Source of the DNA: Haliotis rubra
Taxonomy: Eukaryota
Direction of reading: 5' to 3'
NCBI RefSeq assembly: GCF_003918875.1
Contig: NW_025767013.1
Coordinates: 3,348,001-3,412,000, forward strand
Length of the DNA stretch: 64,000 bases
The position numbers were made by a program, and so were the translations under genes. A model generated the notes under the pieces. That model had not been told where the DNA came from and searched no databases. It saw only the letters and a list, made by a program, of their open reading frames with translations. Shown here piece after piece: positions 23,001-38,000 of the stretch (within the stretch, counting starts at the first letter, position 1; each line of letters begins with the position of its first letter).

Positions 23001-26000
23001 TTCAGCACATGGAATGCCCGGCATATTCAGCAGATTTAGCCCCTATGGAACATGCTTGGGACGAGTAAGGACGTCGGCTTCGTAACAACCACGCCCCTCC
23101 AATCAACCGTGCAGAACTGGCCCAGCATCTCATTGCAGAATGGCAGACAATACCCCAAGCCTTCTTCCAACGACTGGTGAACAGTATGAGACAGAGGTGT
23201 ACTGCTTGTCTTACTGCTCGAGGTGGTTACATCCGTTATTAGTCCAATGTTGGCATTTGAATTTTCACTTCTGACAGTTGGTCACTTTGACCTTATTGAT
23301 CAGCAATCACTGACATTCCTGCTGTTTTTGTCTCCCGTTATGGTTATCATGAAATGTTGGCTCGAGTTGTTATATGATCGCTACATTTTATTGTTATATA
23401 TATTTGTAGTTATGGCCATTAAAAGTTTTGACCCTTAACTTGTTTTGAGTAGTATATATCTCATACAGAAGCTACAGTGTAGGGAGCGACAGCTCCAGAC
23501 TTACTTCCTATCAGCCCTGGATTTGAAGACTTTGCTTACGTCCAGCGTACTGATCACTACACTTGTGTCTGTGGCTGTCTTCTCTGGATGCATCTCCGTT
23601 ATTTCTCCATCCACTTCCAGCCTGATGGGAGCATACATGTTGAACCATTGCTGGAGACAGTAGGTACAGATTGTGGCAACATTCACATGGAACCAAGATT
23701 AAATGACTAGTTGTGTGACGATTCATCGATACGCATCGATGCATGGGCCGCCGATACAGTGAATCAATACAACGATTTACATTGTTGTATATCCCGATAT
23801 GATACTTCAAATGAGCCACGATACATTGATGTTTAACTTTTAATATTGCCAAATCGCGATATCTGTCAAGAAAAAAGATTTACTTTTGTTTAAGGATAGA
23901 AATATATGCTTACTTATTTTCCCTTCATAGGTAAATGTCTTCTTGGAAATTCTTGCGTCAAGAACTGTGTCAGACATAGCACTCACATGTTTTCAACATT
24001 CAACAAGTTCGTGTATAGACTTAATTATCTTGTTTCGAATGAACATTGAACAACGCTGGCAGAATTTGTCATAATACTTTAAAATTGATTTTGTTTTGAT
24101 CTTAAGGTGTTTTATAGTTGGTGTCAGAATTAAAGATTTTAGTATCATGTTGCCACCTTTACATCGGGATTTGTATCGTATCGCAGCTTCAGTGTACAAT
24201 ACTTTGGCAATATATCGTCGTGACTAAAATTTTAGTATCGTGATATATCATATCTCAGGTTGTATGCCAATACCAGCACTATAAATGACTGCACACATTC
24301 ACTTTTTAAACAAGAATATCAATCAGAATTTAGGATACTGTTTCTGATTTCATTAATATCAAGTAATCATAAAATATTATCCTCTGAAAATCGTTGGTTC
24401 ATCCTACCATTTTCTGAGATATTTCAGATTTTCTAATTCTCTCGAACCCACCCACTCAATAATAATCTCTATAATTCATTGTAGGCCTGAGTAGATGAGT
24501 ATGGTTTTTACGCCTTTTTTCAGCAATATCACTGCAGGGGACACCAGACATGGGTTTCACACATTGTACCCGTGTGGGGAATTGAACCCTGGTCTTCAGT
24601 GTGACGAACGGACGCTTTAACCATTTGGCTACCAACCCCCCACACCCTACACCCCCACGAAAACCCCGAAACCTGTGACACAACTTTAGGCTCCTGAGCT
24701 CAATGAATGTGTACATGTTTGTATTTAAATGCCACTTTCAAAGTTCCAGGTATATGATGGTGGACTGCAAATGGTCAGACCTCAGTCACATTTAAATCAG
24801 ACGGCTGGCTCTGATATGATGTTATATACTTTTGTACATCACGTGAACTCTTGGTAAACCAACCCACCAGTCTGAAGGAAGGATGCATGGGCTAGTCACA
24901 TATCAGTTTCATTGATGAAATGTCTTTACTACCTAAAATTATGACTTTAAAAACAACTCCAAACAACAGGGTGTATTAAACACCCACAATAATGTAATGG
25001 CACTGCATATTATTCTACTTTCGAACCTAATGTTTTAGTTTGCTTTTGAGACACTGAAAGCAGAGATTCTGGTACAAAATACTGCTTAATCATACTAAGA
25101 ATTTAGTTGCTGATTGGCTGAATAAAAGGTTCACCTTACACAACTTTCTATACAAGGGTCCCTTGGTCTTCGCCAGAGAAGAATCACTCTGAAGAATAGA
25201 TCTGAGTCCCATTCAACAAAGTGACAGCCTTCGGAGTTATGATCACCTTGGCACTATGATAGCTTTGTGGAAATTTGAATGAGATTGACTGAGTCACTGC
25301 CTGTTAACAGAGCACACATGGATCTATGAGGAATGAAAGTGGTCCTACTGAGCATACCCTGGCCTGAGCACTGAGCCCGATGTCTGTGAAGGCATACTGC
25401 CACTGTGGCAGCCCCAGGTGCATAAGCATGAGGCGGTAGTACTCCAGGAACGATGAGGCCAGGAAGTGCCACCGTCAGGGCACGGTCCAGAAACCAGATC
25501 TCCACGGTGGGCTCGCTCACTCCTACAATAAAATATTCAAATATTAGAAGACAAAAGTCTTGTGCAATACACTAATTTTCATCAATACTTGTCAAAAAGA
25601 TTTATTTGTGAAAAGCATTGTCATTGTAATATATACATAACTTCCTGAAAAGATTTTAGTAGTTTCATCTAATCAGTTTTTGCTGTTAACCTCTACATGG
25701 GTTTGGTTGGTATGTACAGGTGTTTCCAGGAGTGTTCAAGTGTGCAGAGGTGTGTCAAGGAGTGTCTAGGTGTGTCTAGCCATGTCCAGGTGTGTCTAGC
25801 CATGTCTAGGTGGGTCAGGCAATGACCAGGTGTGTCAAGGCATGTTCTGGTGTGTCAAGCATGTCCAGGTGTGTCAATGCATGTTCTGGTGTGTTAGCTA
25901 TCTCGAGGTGTGTCTGCAATGTGTAGGTATGTGTTGGTGTCTAGTCATGACTCAGAGTGTCTAGCCATGTCCAGGTGTGTCAGGCCATGTCCAGGTGTGT

Positions 26001-29000
26001 CAATGCATGTCCTGGTGTGTCAAGGCATGTTCTGTGTGTTAGCTATCTCGAGGTGTGTCTGCAATGTGTAGGTATGTGTTGGTGTCTAGTCATGACTAAG
26101 AGTGTCTAGCCATGTCCAGGTGTGTCAATGCATGTCCAGGTGTGTCAATGCATGTCCAGGTGTGTCAAGGCATGTTCTGGTGTGTTAGCTATCTCGAGGT
26201 GTGTCTGCAATGTGTAGGTATGTGTTGGTGTCTAGTCATGACTAAGAGTGTCTAGCCATGTCCAGGTGTGTCTAAGCATGTCCATGTGTATCAAGGCGTC
26301 CAGGTGTGTCAAGGCATAACCTGGTGTGTCTAGTCATGCCCAGGTTTGTCTAGCCATATCCAGGTTTGTCTAGCCATGTCCAGGTTTGTCTAGCCATGTC
26401 CAGGTGTGTCTAGGAGTGTCTAGCCATGTCCGAGTGTGTCAGGCCATGTCCAGGTGTGTCAATGCATGTCCAGGTGTGTCAAGGCATGTTCTGGTGTGTT
26501 AGCTATCTCGAGGTGTGTCTGCAATGTGTAGGTATGTGTTGGTGTCTAGTCATGACTAAGAGTGTCTAGCCATGTCCAGGTGTGTCTAAGCATGTCCATG
26601 TGTATCAAGGCATCCAGGTGTGTCAAGGCATGTTCTGGTGTGTCTAGTCATGCCCAGGTTTGTCTAGCCATATCCAGGTTTGTCTAGCCAGGTCCAGGTT
26701 TGTCTAGCCAGGTCCAGGTTTGTCTAGCCATGTCCAGGTGTTTCTAGCCACGAACAGGTGTTTCAAGGCATGTCCTGGTGTGTCTTGCCATGTCCTGGTT
26801 TGTATAGCCGTGTCCAGATGTTTCTAGCCATGAACAGGTTTGTCTAGCCATATTCAGGTCGTCTAGCAATGTCCAGGTGTTTTAGCCATGTCCAGGTTTG
26901 TCTAGCCATGTCCAGGTTTGTCTAGCCATGTCCAGGTGTTTCTAGCCATCGCCAGGTTCGTCTAGCCATGTCCAGGTGTTTCTAGCCATCTCCAGGTTTG
27001 TCTAGCCATGTACAGGTCGTCTAGCCATGTCCAGGTGTTTCTAGCCATCTCCAGGTTTGTCTAGCCATGTCCAGGTGTGTCTAGCCATGTCCAGGTTTGT
27101 CTAGCCATGTCCAGGTGTGTCTAGCCATGTCCAGGTTGTCTAGCCATGTCCAGGTGTTTCTAGCCATCTCCAGGTTTGTCTAGCCATGTCAGGGTGTGTC
27201 TTGCCATGTCCTGGTTTGTCTAGCCATGTCCAGGTGTGTCTTGCCATGTCCAGGTGTTTCTAGCCACGAACAGGTGTTTCTAGCCATGTCAGGGTGTGTC
27301 TTGCCATGTCCTGGTTTGTCTAGCCATGTCCAGGTGTGTCTTGCCATGTCCAGGTGTTTCTAGCCATGAACAGATGTTTCAAGGCATGTCCTGGTGTGTC
27401 AAGGCATGTCCAGGTATATCAAAGTGTATCAAGGCATGTCACCTATGGTGTGTCTAATCATGTCGAGATGTGTCAACGCCCTGGCATGGAGACATGGTAG
27501 CTTCTCAATACCATGCTTCTAAACTGTACATCTGCCTGCAAGATATGCATCCTTCAAATAATCAATTACCGAAAGGAATCAAACACCATCATACCCTGAA
27601 AGAAACTTACACTGAAACATCTTCATACACTGACACAAACCATGATATACAAGTCAAAAAGCAACATCTTAGAGATACAACATATACAATGTACCTCTGT
27701 GACCATCATCAATAGACAAGGGTTCCAGATATTCTATTGCTATGACCAATTTAACTTTTATGATGAAGTTACAATAAAATATTAAACTAATCACAATAAG
27801 CATTGAACTGCAAGGTATGTTTTCCCTGAAAATTTATGATGATAACAAAACTTTGTATGTATTATAAAATATATGGCAGTGTAAGGCTGTCCTGCATCTG
27901 TCATTAGCCTATATCAAAATAGGGATGTTATGATTATCTAAGAGAATAGATCATACATGGCAAGCACCTGTGTTACTGGAGTCAGCCTGATTCCCTATCT
28001 ATAATATCAAAGAATGTAACAACAGCAGGGTGAGGATATTACAGATGCAATAAGCCAATGCTGATAATACAAAGGAAGAAGACTCTTAAAATAGATATAT
28101 ATTAAATACACAAAGCAGAAAATGTAATTTTTAGAGTAAAATTGATATTTTATACTTATCCTGACTCATGCTCTTTTTGCTTGTCTTCTTCTTCTTGCGA
28201 ACATAGTGGAACACTTGTATCTCCCTAATTGAAGCTCCCTTCAATTTAAAATCACTAATTAGTATTCACCACGAGTTACCTCCTTTCCACAAGGGGGAGG
28301 CGAGGAGCAGAGCCACCCACCTCTACCCATGTGCCTCACTCTCTCCTCATATACTGAGCCCAACATTTGAATTTACAGGAAATCCAAAGTGTTATTTGGG
28401 GAGGATGGGAGGGCTGACCTCATGAGTCAGGATAAGTATAAAATATCAATTTTACTCTAAAAATTACATATTTTTCCTTATCCTGACTCATGCTCTTGCT
28501 TGTAGCATCCTACGGAACGGAGGTGGGAATATCTAATACTTTGGATTTTTAATAATTAGTGATTTGAACTGTGATGATTGTAATAACCCTATGGGAACTT
28601 CATAAAGGCACTGAACTGATGAATTCCTGCTGCTAACTTATCAGCTGCCATATAAAGGTTATTACCATGTACTTATTATGATAAAGTATATATAACATTA
28701 ATACAATGCTTAAGACTAATAGACTTAAGCTTGTTAATATGCTAGTATAAACTCCTTAGAGTTTGTTAGCTAAAATACTTTAAGATATAACATAGTACTA
28801 AGCTTAAGATATGATTAAACTTAAGCTAATTATATAATAGCAAACTCTTTAGAGTTTGTTAGTTAATATACTTATATGATATAGATATAATGCTGAGCTT
28901 AAGATATGAATAAGCTTTAGCTACATATATAATAGCAAAAACTCTGTAGAGTTTGTTAGTTAATATATTTTTATAATATGAGTATAGTACTGTGCTTAAG

Positions 29001-32000
29001 CTATAATTAACTTAAGCTACATATATAATAGCCAAACTCTGTAGAGTTTGTTAGCTAATATATTTTTATAATATTAGTATAGTACTGAGCTTAAGATATA
29101 ATTAACTTAAGCTACATATATATAGCAAAACTCTGTAGGGTTTTGTTAGCTAATATATTTTTACAATATGAGTATAGTAGTGTGCTTAAGATATAATTAA
29201 CTTAAGCTACATATATAATAGCAAAACTCCGTAGAGTTTGTTAGCTAATATATTTTACAATATGAGTATAGTAGTGTGCTTAAGATATAATGAACTTAAG
29301 CTACATATATAATAGCAAAACTCCGTAGAGTTTGTTAGCTAATATATTTTACAATATGAGTATAGTATTGTGCTTAAGATATTATTAACTTAAGCTACAT
29401 ATATAATAGCCAAAAAACTCTGTAGAGTTTATTAGCTAATATGTTTATAGTGTAACCATAGTACTAAGCTTAAGATAAGATTAGACTTAAGCTAAATGTA
29501 TATAGCAAAATAAACTCCTTAGAGTTTATTAACTAATATACTTTTTATGTTAAAAACATAGTACTGAGCTTAAGTTATGATGAAACTTAAGCTATATATA
29601 TATAATAACAAAACTCCGTCGGGTTTTGTTAGCTAATACCTTTATAATGTAAACATACTGCTTAAGATATGATGAAAACTTAAGCTAATTGTATAATAGC
29701 GAAAACAACCCTTTAGAGTTTGTTAGCTATGATATAAACCTAGTATTGAGCTTATGAAGGAAAACTTAAGCTACATATATAATAGCAAGAACTCCGTAGA
29801 GTTTGTTAGCTAATACATGTTATAATGTAACCATAAAGCTTAAAATATGATAAAACTTAAGCGAAATATATAATAGCAAAACCCTCTTTTAGAGTTTTGA
29901 TAGCTAATATACCTATATGATATAAACATAGTACTGCGCTTAAGATATGAATAAGCTTAAGTTACATATATAATAGCTAAAACTCTGTAGAGTTTGTTAG
30001 CTAATACATGTTATAATATAACCATATTGCTTAGAAATATGATGATACTTAAGCCAAATAGCAAAAAACTCTTTAGAGTTTGTTAGCTAATCTACTTATA
30101 TGATATAAACATAGTACTAAGCTTAAGATATGAATAAGCTTAAGCTACCTATATAATAGCAAAACTCCTTAGAGTTTGTTAGCCAATATATTTTAATAAT
30201 ATGAGTATAGTACTATGCTTAAGGTATAATTAGCTTAAGTTACCTATATAATAGTAAAACTCCGTAGAGTTTGTTAGCTTAATTAACTTAAGCTATGTAT
30301 AAAATAGCCAAAAACTCTGTAGAGTTTGTTAGCTAATGCATTTATCATGTAACCATAGTATTACTCTTAAGATATGAATAACTTAAGGTAAATATATATA
30401 ATAACAAACTCTGTAGAGTTGTTAACTTATATATTGTATGATGTAATAATCATAGTACTGTGATGATAAAAGGAACTTAAGTAAATTATATATAGCATGA
30501 AGCTATTTAGTATTGTTATAAGATAAGTAAAAATCTGTTAGATTGACTTATCTTCTCCGAGAACTGTCAGCTGTTGTGCGAGGACCATGGGATCGAATTG
30601 GTGTATACCTGAGACGTCCTCGGTGGTGATATCTCTCAGATAATGGTTTGCAACCACCATATCGGATTTCCAGAAATAAACCCTCCATTATTTCAATCAT
30701 ATTTGTGTACAACAATTGTAGAAGTTAGAGCTATAATATCATGAGTATTAAGCTCATGGAGGGTCGGAATAGGTCCATCCGCATATGCACGTAGTATGAC
30801 AGTTCTGATCCAAATGGAGATATAATACATGAGACTTCACTCTGCGTAAGTTGATGATAGAGAAAATAATCTGTTGCATTTTTTCCTCCTGTTTGGTTTG
30901 GTGGAGATAAATTTACAGTGCTCTTGCTGGCCATCTTGATAGAATCATCGTATCATGGGGTCCAAGTATGTCATCCAGGCGTGTTCATAAACCTCACTTG
31001 TGAGGTGTTGGAGCACTATATTCATATCCCCAGGTTGGGCGTGAAATTTCCGTTTTATTCTCCAAACAGAAGTTTAGTAGGTTTACTAACCATCTAGTTG
31101 TGTTAGTCGCTTGATGAAATTCAGCTGTAGTCTGAAACGCTGTGGATTTAGATCCACTTGTATCTTTCGTCTAGGTAATTCGCTGCGAAGTCCTTGATGA
31201 TGTAGGTGCACAACCAGGTGTGTCTGTCCTCGTTGAACTTTATGTAAAATCGCCTGACTGCCGATCCCTCGTCTTAACTTGACAGGGGAGGTCTCTAATG
31301 AAGAAAGGCAGTCTAATCATGAATGTTCAGGTTAACTGGACTGTAATGAGGCTTGCTCGTTCACTGATATATAGTTGTCACTTGTGACGTAAGTCTTGAA
31401 CTGTGAATAGAGATCGACCTCTGTGTAGGTCGTTGTCCCTCGCGGTCCAATCAGAACAAGGCATTTTGATTCTGTATAATACCCGCGCTGTGATGTCACC
31501 GGTGTAGCGGGAAAAAACCCACCTTGAATAAATTCTTGTCGTCGTTGATATTAGCATAAACGTCGGTCTTCACCGTAGCTTCCCGAAGTTATCCGAGTGA
31601 CCACGTGTTTCGAGGGTTAATGGTAACCGCGCGAAACCTCCGGCGCGAAAAATCTCGCTCTGTAATTTTATGCTGGGTAGGTTATTTTCCTGGTTGTCGT
31701 GAAAGTAATTTCAGTTTTGAATATAATTCCGACTTCCTTATATATAAGGGTATAAACAACTTGCAAGTTGTGAGCTTGTAGACTGTATACATGAATGTAT
31801 CGTCATAATTGTAGAATTAACGTTGAACTTGTACATATTTCTTCTCAGAAACTTTGACGATTAAGAGTTATACTCGCTGTAACAAGGCTGCTGTTCAATT
31901 TCGATATTGAATTGTCTGCAGATATGCGTAATGGTCACGCATGTAGATAATCGTATCGTCGTCCGGGATTGTATATTAGCAATTTATACGGAATAGTTGA

Positions 32001-35000
32001 TTTCTGTGAAGATCTATGAAATGTCGTTGACTAATAATACAGCGACGTTCTGTGTTGTAAATAGCCTGAGCAATTATCTTCGCGTAGGCTTATAGACGGC
32101 ATCTGGCATACAGTTGATAATCAACTTATGCGACGTCTTGAACGGACTGACGAGTAGCTATATATGACGAGTGGCTAGTATATGGAAACCTTGGAGGAGA
32201 CTTCCTCGGTGAACGCCGGAGACTTCGCGAAGTTCTCGAAGTATCCCTTCTAGATCTTCTGGGTGAAGTAGACTTGGAGCCACTTAGCCTTCGCGACCAT
32301 CGCGAAGGTGTCGAGTCAAAGCCCGATTAGTAGTATATATATATATATAAATATATATATGAGCGCTTGCTTCGTGAACAGCCTCTGTGTTTAACAGGAT
32401 GTGGGATCGGCGAAGCGCTTGCCTAAGTAGGGCCGCATGGATCATCTTATCATATTCAGAAGTCGTGTTACGAAGTCTGGTGATAAGTGTCTAATTGATC
32501 GTTCTAGATCTATTTAGGCCAGCGAACATACGTCTCGTCATGGATTCAACAGAACCAATATACGATTGTAGTTCTTATACTTGATATCGATGATCAACTT
32601 GTCTATGGGTTGATCTTCTCGGAGACTTGTGAGGGGAACGTTGATAGTTTCGCGAAGCTCTTGTATAGTCCCTCGATGTCCTTCTAGATGATGATGATCT
32701 GGATTCAGGTGTCCTTCGCGCATGCCTTCGCGAAGCTTCCTCTGCGTCCGGTCCGGGGGAACGACGATATGACCTTCGCGAAGGCTTCCGTGATGTCTGA
32801 TGGTCCGAGTCCACATCTAGGGATGAAACCGCATAAGGTGATGATCTATCCTGCCTTCGCGAAGTCCTTCGCGAAGGCTGTACATCTAGGTTCTTTCCGC
32901 CTTCGCGAAGGCTGTACATCTAGGTCCTTTCCGCCTTCGCGAAGGCCTTCGCGAAGGCTGTACATCTAGGTCCTTCGTCAAGGTGGTCCGTGACTTCCTT
33001 CGCGAAGGTGACATCGTCCTGGCTGCTACGTTGACGGGGGGTGCCTCTGGGGTGCTGTCTACGTTGGAGCCTTCGCGAAGGCTCGGACCCTGCTACCGCA
33101 GATATTGGTCCTCCATGATGTTCATAATTTGTCGCATCATGTCTTCTGGGATGGTCTGCGACGAGGTCGTCGGTGCTTTATCTGCGGTGTTAATGGAGGG
33201 GTCCACCGGAAAATCGTCCGACATCAGTGTAGAGGCATCAGGCTGCATGGTGATCTCTGCTGATGTCGTTGTAGCTGTCACCGGTCGTTTCTTGTGGCGT
33301 ACGTCGGGGATGATGATCAGCTGATCATCGTAGAGGTCCAGGTCATCGGCTGGAACAATCTCGGTTGAGAAAGTCCTAGTAGACTTCGTTGATTTTCCCT
33401 CAGAGGTCGACGCTGCCCTGGGTGTGCGACGTCTGCGTTGAGTGTTGGTAATGATGGGACCCTCAGGACGATCATCGCATATCTGCGTTGGTACATCAGG
33501 CTGCATGCTGATCTGTGCCGACATCGGTCAATCTTTGATGTACATCCGGTATGATGACCGGCTGATCATCATACAGGCCCAAAACTTCGATGGGAACGGT
33601 CTCGGTTGTTGAGATGTAGTAGAAAAACCCTCTAGTCTTCTGCTGCGACGATGGGATGTCTGGGGAAGCAGGATGCTTCTTGGAGATGGCGGACTACGTC
33701 CCACACCTCTCCACCACTCTAGCGGAACACCACACGGGAGGGGAGTCGGCCAACAGCAGTAGACTGGCGAGGGGTTCCGGTGTATCAGTCATACTAGACT
33801 CTGCATACGCGACCTATCTGCTGTGCGTGCCAAACGCAAAGTAAATATTAATAAAAAGGTAGAATTGGATAAATTAGTACCGCAACTGCAATGTGAATAT
33901 AATAAACATGGCGCCGTACATCATATTAAAGGCGGATCAGCAGCAGCATAAAAAACGTAATCTGCAATAGTACAGAATTTTCATCAACGTAATCCACTGA
34001 AACAAACACGGCGTCCCGTGACTAAACTGTAGAAAAACGACTAAATATCAATATATAATCGTTGAAGGATACTAGCTAAACCTCTATAGATGTCTATACG
34101 AGGTAACTAACTAAATATAATTCAAAGGATATAGTGTGTCGGGAGACACAGGCGCTCTCACGTCCAGCTCACTGGGCGAAGAAGGAGAGAGTGAGGCACA
34201 TGGGTAGAGGTGGCGCCCTCGTTCCCGCGCTTGTGGAAAGGAGGTAACTCGTGGTGAATACTAATTAGTGATTTTAAATTGAAGGGAGCTTCAATTAGGG
34301 AGATACAAGTGTTCCACTATGTTCGCAAGAAGAAGAAGACAAGCAAAAAGAGCATGAGTCAGGATAAGGAAAAATACATGGAAACGCCAATATAAACATA
34401 ATTAATATGAACTGCCACTTGGCATAGCCCACATGGTCGCTGAAAGAGAGTGAGTGCAGAGTGTCATTTATCGGAACTTTTCCCTTTTCTCTCTTAAATA
34501 ATCAAATTCTAATCAAATCAAATCATCATGCAGAGCTGACATGCGTGCACTGTAAATATGTTTTGAGCTAAAATCCAGAAAATCCACCTGTAACTAAATT
34601 AATATCGGTCGTTTCGATGGAAATGAAGAAAGAGCTAAATTTCAATAGTTACCATCAAAGTAAATGATGTAAGCTGACAATTTTTGTGATATTTTTACAG
34701 AAAGAGCTGTTTTGAAGTTTTACTTGCAGACTGTTAAGAATGAGGCTATATCCATAGATCGTGAAACATATGTACAAGGACATGGTCAGGGTCATCCCAA
34801 AATATGACATGCATTAGAGGTGGGTAATAATTAGTGCACAAAAATAGTGGATGGAACAAAGATCTGGTCCCTAAGTATCATTAGGATGGAAACATCAACG
34901 GAATGAGTGAATGTTGTTTTAAACCAGTAATACTCCAGTTACATCTACGGGCAAGACCGGGAAACAAGGATGATATCAAGATGATAAATGACACACAACA

Positions 35001-38000
35001 AGCCAACTTTATCACTGAAACTGCTTGTACAAACTCCAGGAGGGGGGACCTATTCCGCTCTGCAATCCCTTGAACATGAACAGCTTGTACAAACTCCAGG
35101 AGGGGGACCTATTCTGTTCTGTAATCCCTTGAACAAGACCAGCATGTACAAACTCCAGGAGGGGGACCTATTCCGCTCTGCAATCCCTTGAACATGAACA
35201 GCTTGTACAAACTCCAGGAGGGGGTTGAACAGCTTGTACAAACTATTCCATGTTAAACTCTTGTACAAACTCCAGGAGGGGAGGGACTTACTCCGCTCTG
35301 CAATCCCTTGAACATGAACAGCTTGTACAAACTCCAGGAGGGGGACCTATTCCGTTCTGTAATCCCTTGAACATGAACAGCTTGTACAAACTCCAGGAGG
35401 GGGACCTATTCCGCTCTGCAATCCCTTGAACATGAACAGCTTGTACAAACTCCAGGAGGGGAACCTATTCTAATCCCTCGAACCTAAACAGCCCTTGATG
35501 CTGTTTTCAGTCAACAGACAGAGTCAAAATGTGAGAGACAGAAGCATTTCATTGTACATCTCCAGACAACCTTGCAGCAGGGAATATCTGAGATGTTAAA
35601 CTGGCACTAGGCTGTATATACACAGAATATCAATTTAAGTAAGTATCTGGCTTTTTTGCTCATTGATACAGTGAGTGAGTTGGGTTTTATGTCGCTTTTA
35701 ACAATACTCCAGCAATATCATGGTGGGGACACAAGAAATGGGCTTCATGCATTGTACCCATGTAGGGAATTGAACCAAGGCCTTCAGCATGATGAGCAAG
35801 CGCTTTACCTACCAAGCTACCTGAATGCCCCCACTGATACAGGTGAAGGTGACAATGAAAGTATCTCCTGGACAACAGGTCTTATTGTTTTATATTCTTT
35901 TAAATATGAATATTACTTAGCATATATATAAACTACCAAATACAAGGAGAATACAGGGCTTTAGCTGGGATTTTCCAATTGACTTCAGAAAATCCTTACT
36001 CTATTCAAAATTCAACAGGTCATTAACATGGGTGACAACTGAAAGCATATTTTAAGACACTACTGAGGTATAACTGCATAGATGTACTAACTGCAATGGT
36101 GTAGATTTCCATGTACTATTCTACATGACAGCATTACATATCTTGATGGCCACGCCCATCACATCTCTGTGATCTCCTACATCCTGGGCTGATTCTATTT
36201 ATTACCTACTGATATACATTTATAATATTATCAGAATAGAGACCCATATTCTCTATTATGTCTATGAATGCTAATATTTATGAATATTATCTGAAAAGAG
36301 GCCCATGTGCACTTGAAGTACAGTTTATTTTTCATTCTACAATGTCTACTGGTATGTTCAGTTGTGTACTGCAGTGCTGATGTAAACTGTTGGTAAATTA
36401 AGTTGTTATGTCTCAGCTTTCTGCCATAAGGCCACTGACAAATGCAAATACACCACAAGAATTTTTGGTCACATTCAATACAACAATGAGAAACTAAAAT
36501 ACGTAGCATTTTTCTCTGAAAATATAACATTCTAAAGCAAAGAGATTGCTCTGTTTAATAACCTGAATTGGACATTTCTTTCCAAATAGGAACATTTGAG
36601 CAACATTTGCTGTAGATATTCAGATAAATCCCTGCTTTACAGTGATTTCATTCAATAACAAACCCTCTGCAATTTTTGCCTGCCACGTGCCAAAGGACAA
36701 GTAGCAAGTCAACAACCCCTGTAATACATGATGAAAGATAGAAAAAGAACAAACATACAAAGCTTAGAGCAATGGGTATACAAAGATGACAACTGATGCT
36801 ATTGAACACTCACATTCATATAATAGACACATATAAATTTTCTTTTGTGTTTCATGAACTAAAGACAATTGAAATCTCCTTAAATAATTGACCCGTGAAG
36901 ATCCGGGGTAGAATAGGTCTTCAGCAACCCATGCTTGCCACAAAAGGCGACTATGCTTGTCGTAAGAGGCGACTAACGGGATCGGATGGTCAGGCTCGCT
37001 GACTTGGTTGACACATGTCATCAGTTCCCAATTGTGCAGATCGATGCTCATGCTGTTGATCACTGGATTGTCTGGTCCAGACTCGATTATTTACAGACCG
37101 CCGCCATATAGCTGGAATATTGCTGAGTGTGGCGTAAAACTCAACTCACTCACTCACCTTAAATAATTAAGTTCCATGTGTGAGAGAATTGTTTATGGTT
37201 AGTACAAACTGTGTAAAGGAGTAAAGATAAATCAATCCACTAGCAGTGCAATACAAAGCAAAGAGTTTGTGATACAATTCTTGTATTTCTTTACAGTCGT
37301 TATCAAGGCATGAGATTACAATGAAGTGCGCATCTCAGCATACTTGCAAAATCAGTGAAGGGAAATTCAAATTCATCTGGACTTGAGTCATCAGAACCTA
37401 GTTGGGCTGGTTACATCACAAAGGAAAGTATTTCATGTATATATGTGTGTAAACATAGTTGGTTTGGTCAGTAAGACTAAAATAGGCACCTAGAAATGAC
37501 ATAAAAAATAAAGCTGAAATAAAAATCCTGAAGCAAATGAAGCACAAAAATTTAAAATAAAACAAAATTGCTAGAACTATGACTTGTTTGTTATTACCCG
37601 GCAGAAAACAAGGGTAGTCTTCAGTACGACACACTTCAACACAATCAAATTACATCAAATTACAAAAACAGAAGTAATCAAAGAAATCAAACAACATTTA
37701 TTTCATCATGACAATTGTATATCTTGTATTCAGGAGTTTGAAGAGCCACAGATCCCTACAAAGGGTCCAAGTTTAGTCTAAAGGCCAGTTAATCTTCTTT
37801 TAACCCTATATTGCTTCATCTTTAACAAAATCTTTTAAACACATTGATCAAAAGGAGATTTCAATTGAGAAAAAGGACAACTGTCATGACTGGTATAGCT
37901 ACCAGATAAGAAATTGTTTTAACACAACACAGAGGCATAACAACAAAACAACTATATATATATACAATTTTTGGTAGAATTTTCACTTTCCTGATATCAA

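What the first reader, a model, noticed from the sequence alone, without database searches (positions are those of the whole stretch)
28709..30500. ~95-bp array whose units each carry two conserved hairpins, between the YR end and the ICR
Seen: each unit has hairpin 1, AAACTC-(TGTA/CGTA/CTTA/TTTA)-GAGTTT, where changes concentrate in the 4-nt loop and some stem changes stay G.T-compatible (GGGTTTT at ~29138 and ~29621). It also has hairpin 2, GCTTAAG-N~10-CTTAAGC, with a variable loop. Linkers drift more than stems. Inference: structure rather than sequence may be maintained. The array could act as RNA/ssDNA packaging or protein-binding sites, recombinase-type inverted-arm sites, or a small-RNA source. 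Alternatively it is a satellite being spread by a DIRS vector.
Basis: partly seen in the sequence, partly recalled or inferred. Interest (0 to 1): 0.7.

Follow-up and report, generated by a model that had tools for sequence, protein, structure and literature searches.

The report
Repeat array inside abalone DIRS retrotransposon
A 95-base repeat carrying two small palindromes is a multiplied piece of the non-coding tail of a DIRS retrotransposon, copied about 20 times in a crippled, hitch-hiking version of the element; its motifs are kept by selection on sequence, but nothing shows that a folded structure is what is kept.

Summary
The array is real: period 95, about 19 units, 28709-30494. It lies on the minus strand of a 6.25-kb DIRS-type element, between a ruined tyrosine-recombinase (YR) end and the internal complementary region (ICR).

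It is neither local nor a free satellite. About 200-430 near-identical element copies carry it, with 17-25 units each.

Autonomous relatives with RT, RNase H and YR hold the same unit at the same place, but only 1, 2 or 3-4 times. So the array is a tandem amplification of the element's own tail module, largest in a deletion derivative.

Stems are conserved: between-unit diversity is 0.06-0.07 against 0.26-0.32 elsewhere, while neutral decay after insertion is equal. The variable hairpin-1 loop is a CpG hotspot, and the unpaired block TTAGCTAA is as conserved as the stems.

No covariation was found, and most stem changes break the pair. The G.T argument does not hold up.

My reading is that the module is a cis motif under sequence constraint, multiplied by slippage or template switching. 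Whether it acts as a hairpin is open.

The scan found this before on other DNA of this genome (s1-349470) and read it the same way. This kind of thing is known; it is a new member.

The parts
28112..28350 (-). 3' inverted terminal repeat of the DIRS-type element (the element reads on the minus strand), with its terminal extension at 28112-28148
   Evidence: Arms 28149-28293 / 34230-34374 are 99% complementary, and 28317-28347 / 34183-34213 are 100%. Alignment. 28112-28170 is complementary to ICR half 28421-28479 (I3).
28421..28497 (-). Internal complementary region (ICR): two abutting halves complementary to the two element termini
   Evidence: I3 and I7, and D20 (28138-28175 / 28460-28497). 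The same arrangement is present in all relatives.
28498..28708 (-). Conserved non-repeated spacer between the array and the ICR. It holds a 9-bp inverted repeat at 28580-28588 / 28657-28665.
   Evidence: 97% identical across 40 scored copies. It aligns across subfamilies, with matched C-run and G-run changes.
28709..30494 (-). The 95-bp tandem array, 19 units. Each unit reads, on the + strand: AAACTC-N4-GAGTTT, TTAGCTAA, linker, TAGTACT, GCTTAAG-N10-CTTAAGC, linker.
   Evidence: The array is 99-100% identical at 40 or more other loci. Unit number varies among copies.
30258..30312 (-). Half unit (55 bp) inside the array; a once-per-array marker
   Evidence: The 26-mer across its junction has 180 exact genome hits, each about 222 bp from the YR-side junction marker.
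30495..30970 (-). Short spacer and remnant of the C-terminal part of the tyrosine-recombinase gene, broken by stops
   Evidence: 77% DNA identity to the YR end of the autonomous relative L065. Open pieces only. No Pfam hit in this copy.
30983..34182 (-). Ruined interior. Three short patches are homologous to the autonomous element (30983-31207, 32165-32419); the rest is unrelated or low-complexity. No RT, RNase H or intact YR.
34183..34410 (-). 5' inverted terminal repeat with its terminal extension

Best explanation
The array is a VNTR-like tandem amplification of a ~95-nt module in the non-coding tail of an abalone-type DIRS1-like retrotransposon. The tail here means the stretch between the recombinase stop codon and the ICR.

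Shown:
- The module is single-copy in older autonomous lineages, present 2 and 3-4 times in younger autonomous ones, and present 17-25 times in a deletion derivative. That derivative has lost RT, RNase H and most of YR, and now stands at roughly 200-430 nearly identical copies.
- Edge units are orthologous to the edge units of the short arrays. Most inner units descend from the 'middle' unit.
- Within units, the two palindromic motifs and the block TTAGCTAA are held constant. Linkers diverge, although all positions decay equally fast after insertion.

Inferred:
- The derivative is mobilised in trans by the autonomous elements.
- The module is a cis-acting signal of the element, read by one of its own proteins either as a hairpin in the RNA or the single-stranded cDNA, or as duplex palindromes.
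- Units are gained and lost by replication slippage, unequal exchange, or template switching of the reverse transcriptase between repeats.
- Multiplication itself is probably tolerated rather than required.
For: DIRS anatomy: inverted terminal repeats and an ICR complementary to both termini.

Autonomous relatives: Pfam hits to RVT_1, RT_RNaseH and Phage_integrase/SAM-like in L065, L064 and L062, which carry the same repeat at the same place over only 258-375 bp.

Unit number by lineage: 1 unit at 84-87% YR identity, 2 at 91%, and 3-4 at 89-97% and in L065. Many of these copies have open frames of 995-1317 aa.

Unit tree: single-unit lineages separate at 98/99 support. The ICR-proximal units form a 12-row group (98/76, inner forks left open) and the middle units a 19-row clade (94/91); each contains window units.

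Copy number and length variation: 430, 199 and 180 exact hits for three once-per-array markers, with controls at 0. Steps of one unit: -1 x4, 0 x16, +1 x19, +2 x1, +6 x1.

Constraint: between-unit diversity in the stems is 0.055-0.073, against 0.26-0.32. Variable columns are 8/24 against 47/56 (p 1.7e-5). Private substitutions are 24/12707 against 63/27315 (p 0.49). The ratio of between-unit to private changes has an odds ratio of 0.33, p 0.002.

Deletion-derivative structure.

Trans action of DIRS-1 proteins, and a 3' hairpin proposed as primer: PMC7192593.
Against: - No compensatory change supports a fold, so 'hairpin' is only one possible way the motif is read.
- Inverted-repeat content of one unit is near chance for this base composition.
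- Single-unit lineages have long open frames and many copies, so extra units are not needed.
- Related DIRS in other Haliotis species (69-71% YR identity) have no array. Only one of four keeps a hairpin-1-like motif, and one has it deleted. The module is therefore not general to DIRS.
- The constraint test rests on 18 related units of one array and 130 private substitutions. Units are not independent, so p-values are optimistic.
Confidence: 0.62

Rival explanations
1. Functionless VNTR. The tail of this DIRS is simply prone to slippage. The palindromes persist for mechanical reasons (they promote slippage, or are self-corrected by intrastrand pairing) and do nothing for the element.
For: - Unit number changes freely among copies.
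- Single-unit lineages do well.
- The module is absent from related DIRS of other species.
- No covariation.
- Palindrome content is near chance.
Against: Position-specific conservation among old units, with equal neutral rates, is not expected without some filter. Hairpin 1 is kept across lineages down to 84% YR identity in an otherwise fast-changing tail.
Confidence: 0.2
2. One reading: the two hairpins are structures kept by selection in RNA or single-stranded DNA, for packaging, dimerisation or priming. Pairing, not sequence, is what counts.
For: - Both arms of each stem are conserved.
- Loop length of hairpin 1 varies from 3 to 6 nt among lineages while AACT/AGTT stays. A hairpin tolerates this better than a spaced duplex site would.
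- Units fold better than shuffles.
- DIRS-1 uses single-stranded cDNA, and a 3' hairpin has been proposed as primer (PMC7192593).
Against: - Covariation is no higher than in shuffled or slid controls.
- 82% of departures break the pair.
- RNAalifold finds no consensus pair.
- Loop variability is explained by CpG decay.
- TTAGCTAA and TAGTACT, which cannot form hairpins by themselves, are conserved too.
- Wobble-compatible changes occur on both strands.
Confidence: 0.15
3. A host satellite that was captured and is being spread by a DIRS vector.
For: The array is dispersed with the element at hundreds of loci.
Against: - The unit is single-copy, at the same place, in older autonomous lineages.
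- The 3226 motif hits are accounted for by about 430 arrays with 5-8 hits each.
- Internal and junction markers co-occur at fixed distance.
- No cluster longer than about 2 kb appears among the first 100 motif hits listed, and the one array of about 25 units is still bounded by both junction markers.
Confidence: 0.02
4. Stuffer. The array restores the length of a deletion derivative to that of a full element, because replication or packaging prefers about 6 kb.
For: The derivative is 6.2-6.3 kb. Local autonomous relatives are longer than 5.8 kb.
Against: - Autonomous lineages also grew from 1 to 4 units.
- Copies with 17-25 units coexist.
- A related H. asinina element is only 5.1 kb.
- No known length rule for DIRS.
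Confidence: 0.04
5. Recombinase target sites, or a source of small RNAs such as piRNA triggers or hairpin precursors.
For: Inverted arms are present. TE tails are common small-RNA sources (general knowledge).
Against: Arms of 6-7 bp around 4 or 10 nt do not match tyrosine-recombinase core sites, which have 11-13-bp arms around 6-8 bp (general knowledge). DIRS integration uses the joined termini, not the tail (PMC7192593). No Rfam match. Reads could not be consulted.
Confidence: 0.05

Closest known systems
DIRS1-like retrotransposons (DIRS-1 of Dictyostelium; mollusc elements such as LgDIRS and AcaDIRS in PMC3266345)
   Same: Inverted terminal repeats with unequal terminal extensions. An ICR complementary to both termini, placed before the 3' repeat. 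RT, RNase H and tyrosine recombinase in the autonomous relatives. Proteins that can act in trans (PMC7192593).
   Different: This copy has no working gene. It carries a 1.8-kb tandem array in the tail. The DIRS overview and the Xenopus DIRS paper do not mention tandem arrays. The overview also has no mention of non-autonomous derivatives, and the Xenopus paper uses the word only in a cited title.
Tandem repeats in the untranslated regions of LTR retrotransposons that seed satellites (plant Ogre-type elements; PMC7004042; reviews PMC9659126 and PMC12628747)
   Same: A short array inside the non-coding part of a retroelement, variable in unit number among copies, spread by the element.
   Different: Here the carrier is a DIRS, which neither review mentions. 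No free long array was seen. Growth can be traced from one unit.
SVA elements of hominids (non-autonomous, with an internal VNTR)
   Same: A non-autonomous retroelement mobilised in trans, whose internal VNTR varies in unit number between copies (my own knowledge).
   Different: Unrelated sequence, a different mobilising machinery (LINE-1), and a composite origin. Here the VNTR comes from the parent element's own tail.
3' stem-loops of stringent-type LINEs, and the 3' hairpin of DIRS-1 proposed as primer
   Same: A small conserved hairpin-capable motif in the 3' non-coding part of a retroelement, thought to be read by its own reverse transcriptase (my own knowledge; DIRS-1 hairpin cited in PMC7192593).
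   Different: The motif here lies upstream of the ICR, not at the RNA 3' end. It is reiterated, and its recognition is untested.

Membership tests
DIRS1-like retrotransposon (the carrier) | Inverted terminal repeats | tested here: met
   99-100% complementary arms at 28149-28347 / 34183-34374
DIRS1-like retrotransposon (the carrier) | Internal complementary region made of the complements of both termini, next to the 3' repeat | tested here: met
   28421-28497; I3, I7 and D20. Conserved in all relatives.
DIRS1-like retrotransposon (the carrier) | Genes for RT/RNase H and a tyrosine recombinase | tested here: not met
   None in this copy. They are met in relatives L065, L064 and L062. So this copy is a non-autonomous derivative.
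Element-borne tandem array (VNTR in a transposon's non-coding region) | Head-to-tail units inside the element, same place in all copies | tested here: met
Element-borne tandem array (VNTR in a transposon's non-coding region) | Unit number varies among copies | tested here: met
   1590-1886 bp in 29 copies. Steps of one unit in 41 copies.
Satellite DNA | Long free-standing arrays outside the element | tested here: not met
   Motif hits are accounted for by element-borne arrays. The assembly could still hide collapsed arrays, and raw reads were not available.
Structured RNA element | Base pairs kept through compensatory changes | tested here: not met
   Covariation score 0.047 against 0.040 shuffled. 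Slid controls reach 0.056-0.060. No RNAalifold pair.
Structured RNA element | Match to a curated RNA family | tested here: not met
   Rfam 15 scan of 28000-34500 at E up to 1 gave only a chance-level miRNA hit elsewhere.
Structured RNA element | Folding energy beyond composition | tested here: inconclusive
   z from -1.5 to -4.3 depending on piece and strand. Perfect inverted-repeat content is near chance.
Tyrosine-recombinase core site | Inverted arms of about 11-13 bp around a 6-8-bp crossover spacer (general knowledge) | tested here: not met
   Arms are 6 and 7 bp; spacers are 4 and about 10 nt.

The most novel reading that the evidence does not exclude
The reiterated module is a decoy that pays. 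By carrying about 20 copies of the signal that the DIRS machinery recognises, the gene-less derivative out-competes its autonomous parents for their trans-acting proteins. This would explain why unit number rises stepwise (1, 2, 3-4, about 20) and why the largest array sits in the most recently amplified, parasitic family.
Probability: 0.2. Interest if true: 0.6.

Novelty: new member of a known kind. Interest (0 to 1): 0.35.

Why it matters
Very little is known about the cis signals of DIRS elements. The primer of reverse transcription is still unknown (PMC7192593).

A short motif that one family keeps constant while everything around it drifts is a concrete candidate signal to test. So is the fact that a parasitic derivative carries it twenty-fold.

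The case also shows, step by step, how a tandem array is born from single-copy transposon sequence. This is the presumed first stage of satellite DNA birth. The carrier here is a DIRS, a transposon class that the two reviews I checked on the subject do not mention.

The structural claim that made the finding look special does not hold.

Tried and rejected
- RNAalifold on 55 units from 20 or more elements: no consensus pair.
- An extended stem, TAGC/GCTA flanking hairpin 1: a few double changes, but no more than slid controls.
- Rfam: nothing.
- Pfam on ten open pieces of this copy's interior: nothing.
- Strand argument from wobble pairs. Cells favour the + strand in hairpin 1 (15 against 2), but these reduce to about 6 against 2 events. 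Within the window it is 4 against 1. Not significant.
- Perfect inverted-repeat count against shuffles: near chance.
I tried no other route.
- One ENA contig of a 47%-identical YR had no DNA on hand.
- Literature searches for DIRS-borne tandem arrays found none.

Full report
**1. What is there**

Tandem Repeats Finder reports a 95-base period, with a 190-base higher order, from 28708 to 30494. I cut the array into 19 units: 17 full, one half unit at 30258-30312, and a degenerate last unit.

On the + strand each unit reads as follows:
- AAACTC-N4-GAGTTT (hairpin 1)
- GTTAGCTAAT
- an A+T-rich linker
- TAGTACT
- GCTTAAG-N10-CTTAAGC (hairpin 2)
- a second linker, ACATATATAATAGCAA

Hairpin 1 is exact in 15 units. 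The CTTAAG pair of hairpin 2 is exact in 14.

**2. Surroundings**

The array lies inside a 6.25-kb element bounded by inverted repeats. Arms 28149-28293 / 34230-34374 are 99% complementary, and arms 28317-28347 / 34183-34213 are 100%.

At 28421-28497 there are two abutting segments complementary to the two element termini, including their unequal outer extensions (I3, I7 and D20). This is the internal complementary region (ICR) that defines DIRS elements.

The element reads on the minus strand. A remnant of the recombinase (YR) C-terminus ends near 30541. The array, a 210-base spacer, the ICR and the 3' repeat follow it.

The interior has no open frame above 144 codons and no Pfam hit. Against an autonomous relative it keeps only three short patches and the YR end, so RT, RNase H and most of YR are deleted. 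It is a non-autonomous deletion derivative.

The best named protein relatives of the family's recombinase are from Haliotis. The host is therefore an abalone or a close relative. This is an inference.

**3. Not a local oddity and not a free satellite**

- A three-unit probe is 99-100% identical at 40 or more scored loci out of 1127 candidates.
- The terminal-repeat/ICR stretch has 3224 candidates.
- The motif AAACTC-N4-GAGTTTGTTAGCTAAT has 3226 exact hits, against 0 for the reversed control.
- Three 26-mers that occur once per array give these counts, controls 0: 430 for the ICR-side junction, 199 for the YR-side junction, and 180 for the half-unit junction.
- The last two markers lie at a fixed 222 bases from each other.
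- With 5-8 motif hits per array, about 430 arrays account for nearly all 3226 hits.
- No cluster longer than about 2 kb appears among the first 100 motif hits listed, and the longest array in the marker comparison, about 25 units, is still bounded by both junction markers.

In the assembly, then, the repeat exists only inside the element.

Array length varies in steps of one unit. It is 1590-1886 bases in 29 copies. In 41 further copies, relative to this one, the steps are -1 x4, 0 x16, +1 x19, +2 x1 and +6 x1. The modal form has one unit more than the window's copy.

**4. Origin**

Isolated motif hits led to relatives with long open frames. These hit RVT_1, RT_RNaseH and, weakly, Phage_integrase with its SAM-like domain.

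These relatives carry the same repeat at the same place, but over only 258-375 bases.

The recombinase of one of them has more than 11000 candidate matches in this genome. At least 118 are at 84-100% identity, and many sit in open frames of 995-1317 codons. The family is large and probably active.

I fetched twenty tails across that identity range. They show a gradient:

| Units in the tail | YR identity of the lineage |
|---|---|
| 1 | 84-87% |
| 2 | 91% |
| 3-4 | 89-97% and in L065 |
| 17-25 | the deletion derivative |

A tree of 55 units gives this picture:
- Single-unit lineages separate from the rest (98/99 support).
- The ICR-proximal unit of this window groups with the ICR-proximal units of the short arrays.
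- The YR-proximal unit groups with their YR-proximal units.
- Eleven inner units fall in one clade with the 'middle' unit of the three-unit arrays (94/91).
- Four inner units form a second type.

This matches the partial 190-base alternation. The array therefore grew from the element's own single-copy tail sequence, mostly by multiplication of inner units.

**5. Is structure, or sequence, or nothing kept?**

All positions of a unit share the same duplication history. Position-specific differences therefore reflect mutation rate or selection.

Between-unit diversity by class:

| Class | Diversity |
|---|---|
| Hairpin 1 stem | 0.073 |
| Hairpin 2 stem | 0.055 |
| TTAGCTAA | 0.083 |
| TAGTACT | 0.18 |
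| Hairpin 1 loop | 0.32 |
| Hairpin 2 loop | 0.30 |
| Linkers | 0.26 |

Variable columns number 8 of 24 in stems and 47 of 56 elsewhere (p 1.7e-5).

As a neutral yardstick I counted private substitutions in 29 young copies aligned over the whole array:
- Overall: 130 in 49776 site-copies, or 0.0026.
- Stems: 24/12707.
- Linkers plus hairpin 2 loop: 63/27315 (p 0.49 against stems).
- Hairpin 1 loop: 0.0125.
- CpG sites: 0.045.

The ratio of between-unit to private changes is 14:24 in stems and 160:90 elsewhere (odds ratio 0.33, p 0.002).

The stems are therefore under constraint that mutation rate does not explain. The caveat is that units are related and the counts are small.

The hairpin 1 loop is different. 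Its ancestral CGTA holds one of the few CpGs of the unit, and its variants TGTA and CATA are CpG decay products. Scaled by its own mutation rate, it is no less constrained than the stems (17:27). Only two of its four positions vary.

The unpaired block next to hairpin 1 is as constant as the stems.

**6. Covariation**

I aligned 55 distinct units from this window and 20 autonomous copies, sense strand. RNAalifold predicts no consensus pair.

For the two hairpins as named:
- 87.8% of cells pair.
- Three pairs show a change on both sides, against 1.5 in shuffles (72 of 500 reach it).
- The covariation score is 0.047, against 0.040 shuffled.
- The same structure slid by one or two columns scores 0.056-0.060.
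- Of 101 departures from the commonest pair, 83 are unpaired, 14 are one-sided and 4 are two-sided.

Adding a flanking TAGC/GCTA helix does not change this.

On the RNA they are C-A mismatches. Other units (29707, 29880) carry the mirror change.

Counted as cells, hairpin 1 shows 15 antisense-only against 2 sense-only wobbles. These come from about six and two events, and in the window the count is 4 against 1.

Single units fold better than shuffles as RNA or DNA on both strands (z -2.3 to -3.9). Longer pieces range from z -1.5 to -4.3. Perfect inverted-repeat content is matched by 22-41% of shuffles in three of four units.

One point mildly favours a hairpin over a spaced duplex site. Among lineages the hairpin 1 loop ranges from 3 to 6 bases while AACT/AGTT stays.

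**7. Depth**

In the fast-changing tail of single-unit lineages, AACTC...GAGTT, AGC and GTAC remain as islands. The CTTAAG pair is lost in some lineages.

In other species:
- One H. asinina element (YR 71%) keeps a recognisable GCTC-TGCA-GAGT at the homologous place.
- Another H. asinina element has that stretch deleted.
- Three H. cracherodii elements (YR 61%, 69% and 70% identical) have different tails.
- None has an array.

The module is thus a feature of one lineage, not of DIRS in general.

**8. Mechanism**

What is shown:
- Where the array comes from.
- That it travels with the element.
- That unit number changes often.
- That its motifs are filtered at the sequence level.

What is inferred:
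- The gene-less derivative is mobilised in trans. DIRS-1 proteins can act in trans (PMC7192593).
- The motif is a cis signal read by an element protein.
- Units are gained and lost by slippage, unequal exchange or template switching during reverse transcription.

DIRS-1 replicates through single-stranded cDNA. Its primer is unknown, and a 3' hairpin has been suggested (same paper). A hairpin reading is therefore plausible but unproven here.

Single-unit lineages thrive, so I take multiplication to be tolerated rather than needed. The alternative is that many copies help a parasite compete for the machinery. I give that about one chance in five.

**9. What is known**

Arrays in the untranslated parts of retrotransposons that vary among copies and can seed satellites are well described (PMC7004042, PMC9659126, PMC12628747). 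The two reviews do not mention DIRS.

The DIRS overview and the Xenopus DIRS paper do not mention tandem arrays. The overview also has no mention of non-autonomous copies, and the Xenopus paper uses the word only in a cited title.

I therefore file this as a new member of a known kind.

The scan met the same family on another piece of this genome (s1-349470). That note reached the same reading, which I saw only after my own analysis.

**10. Limits**

Noticed in passing
window 28580-28588 and 28657-28665; loci L073-L086 (alignment): There is a 9-bp inverted repeat (GTAATAACC / GGTTATTAC) in the spacer just before the ICR. In other subfamilies the homologous arms read CCCCCC...GGGGGG or ACCCC...GGGGT. 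This looks like matched change on both sides, so it is a better candidate for a selected long-range stem than the array hairpins.
   Followed up: partly
L077-L086, about 230-260 bases past the YR end: Single-unit lineages share GGGTCGCTTCTCCA-CTT-TGGAGTCGCT. In L084 and L085 the CTCC/GGAG stem reads CTCT/AGAG, a possible compensatory pair. Multi-unit lineages lack this stretch.
   Followed up: no
window 32772-32975: Short tandem copies of the palindrome GCCTTCGCGAAGGC (34-base and 12-base periods) lie inside the ruined interior of the same element.
   Followed up: no
window 25748-27415: A 20-base minisatellite of about 83 copies, with higher-order periods of 145-165, lies 700 bases outside the element's 3' end.
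   Followed up: no
window 24537-24633 and 35725-35821; also 35670-35718 / 37106-37154: Copies of a tRNA-like SINE sequence (76% alike), and an inverted pair of a second short repeat, flank the element.
   Followed up: no
G000 genome-wide: The DIRS family is very large: more than 11000 recombinase candidates. Many copies have open frames of 995-1317 codons that run from RT into the recombinase, so the family is probably still active.
   Followed up: partly
L061-L063 (G000:C69:2093000-2119999): Three autonomous-type DIRS copies with short arrays lie within 27 kb of each other.
   Followed up: no
window 30521-30557: Immediately after the recombinase stop there is a further small inverted repeat (GATAAGT...ACTTATC). 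Other lineages have GAGAC-NTA-GTCTC at the same place.
   Followed up: no
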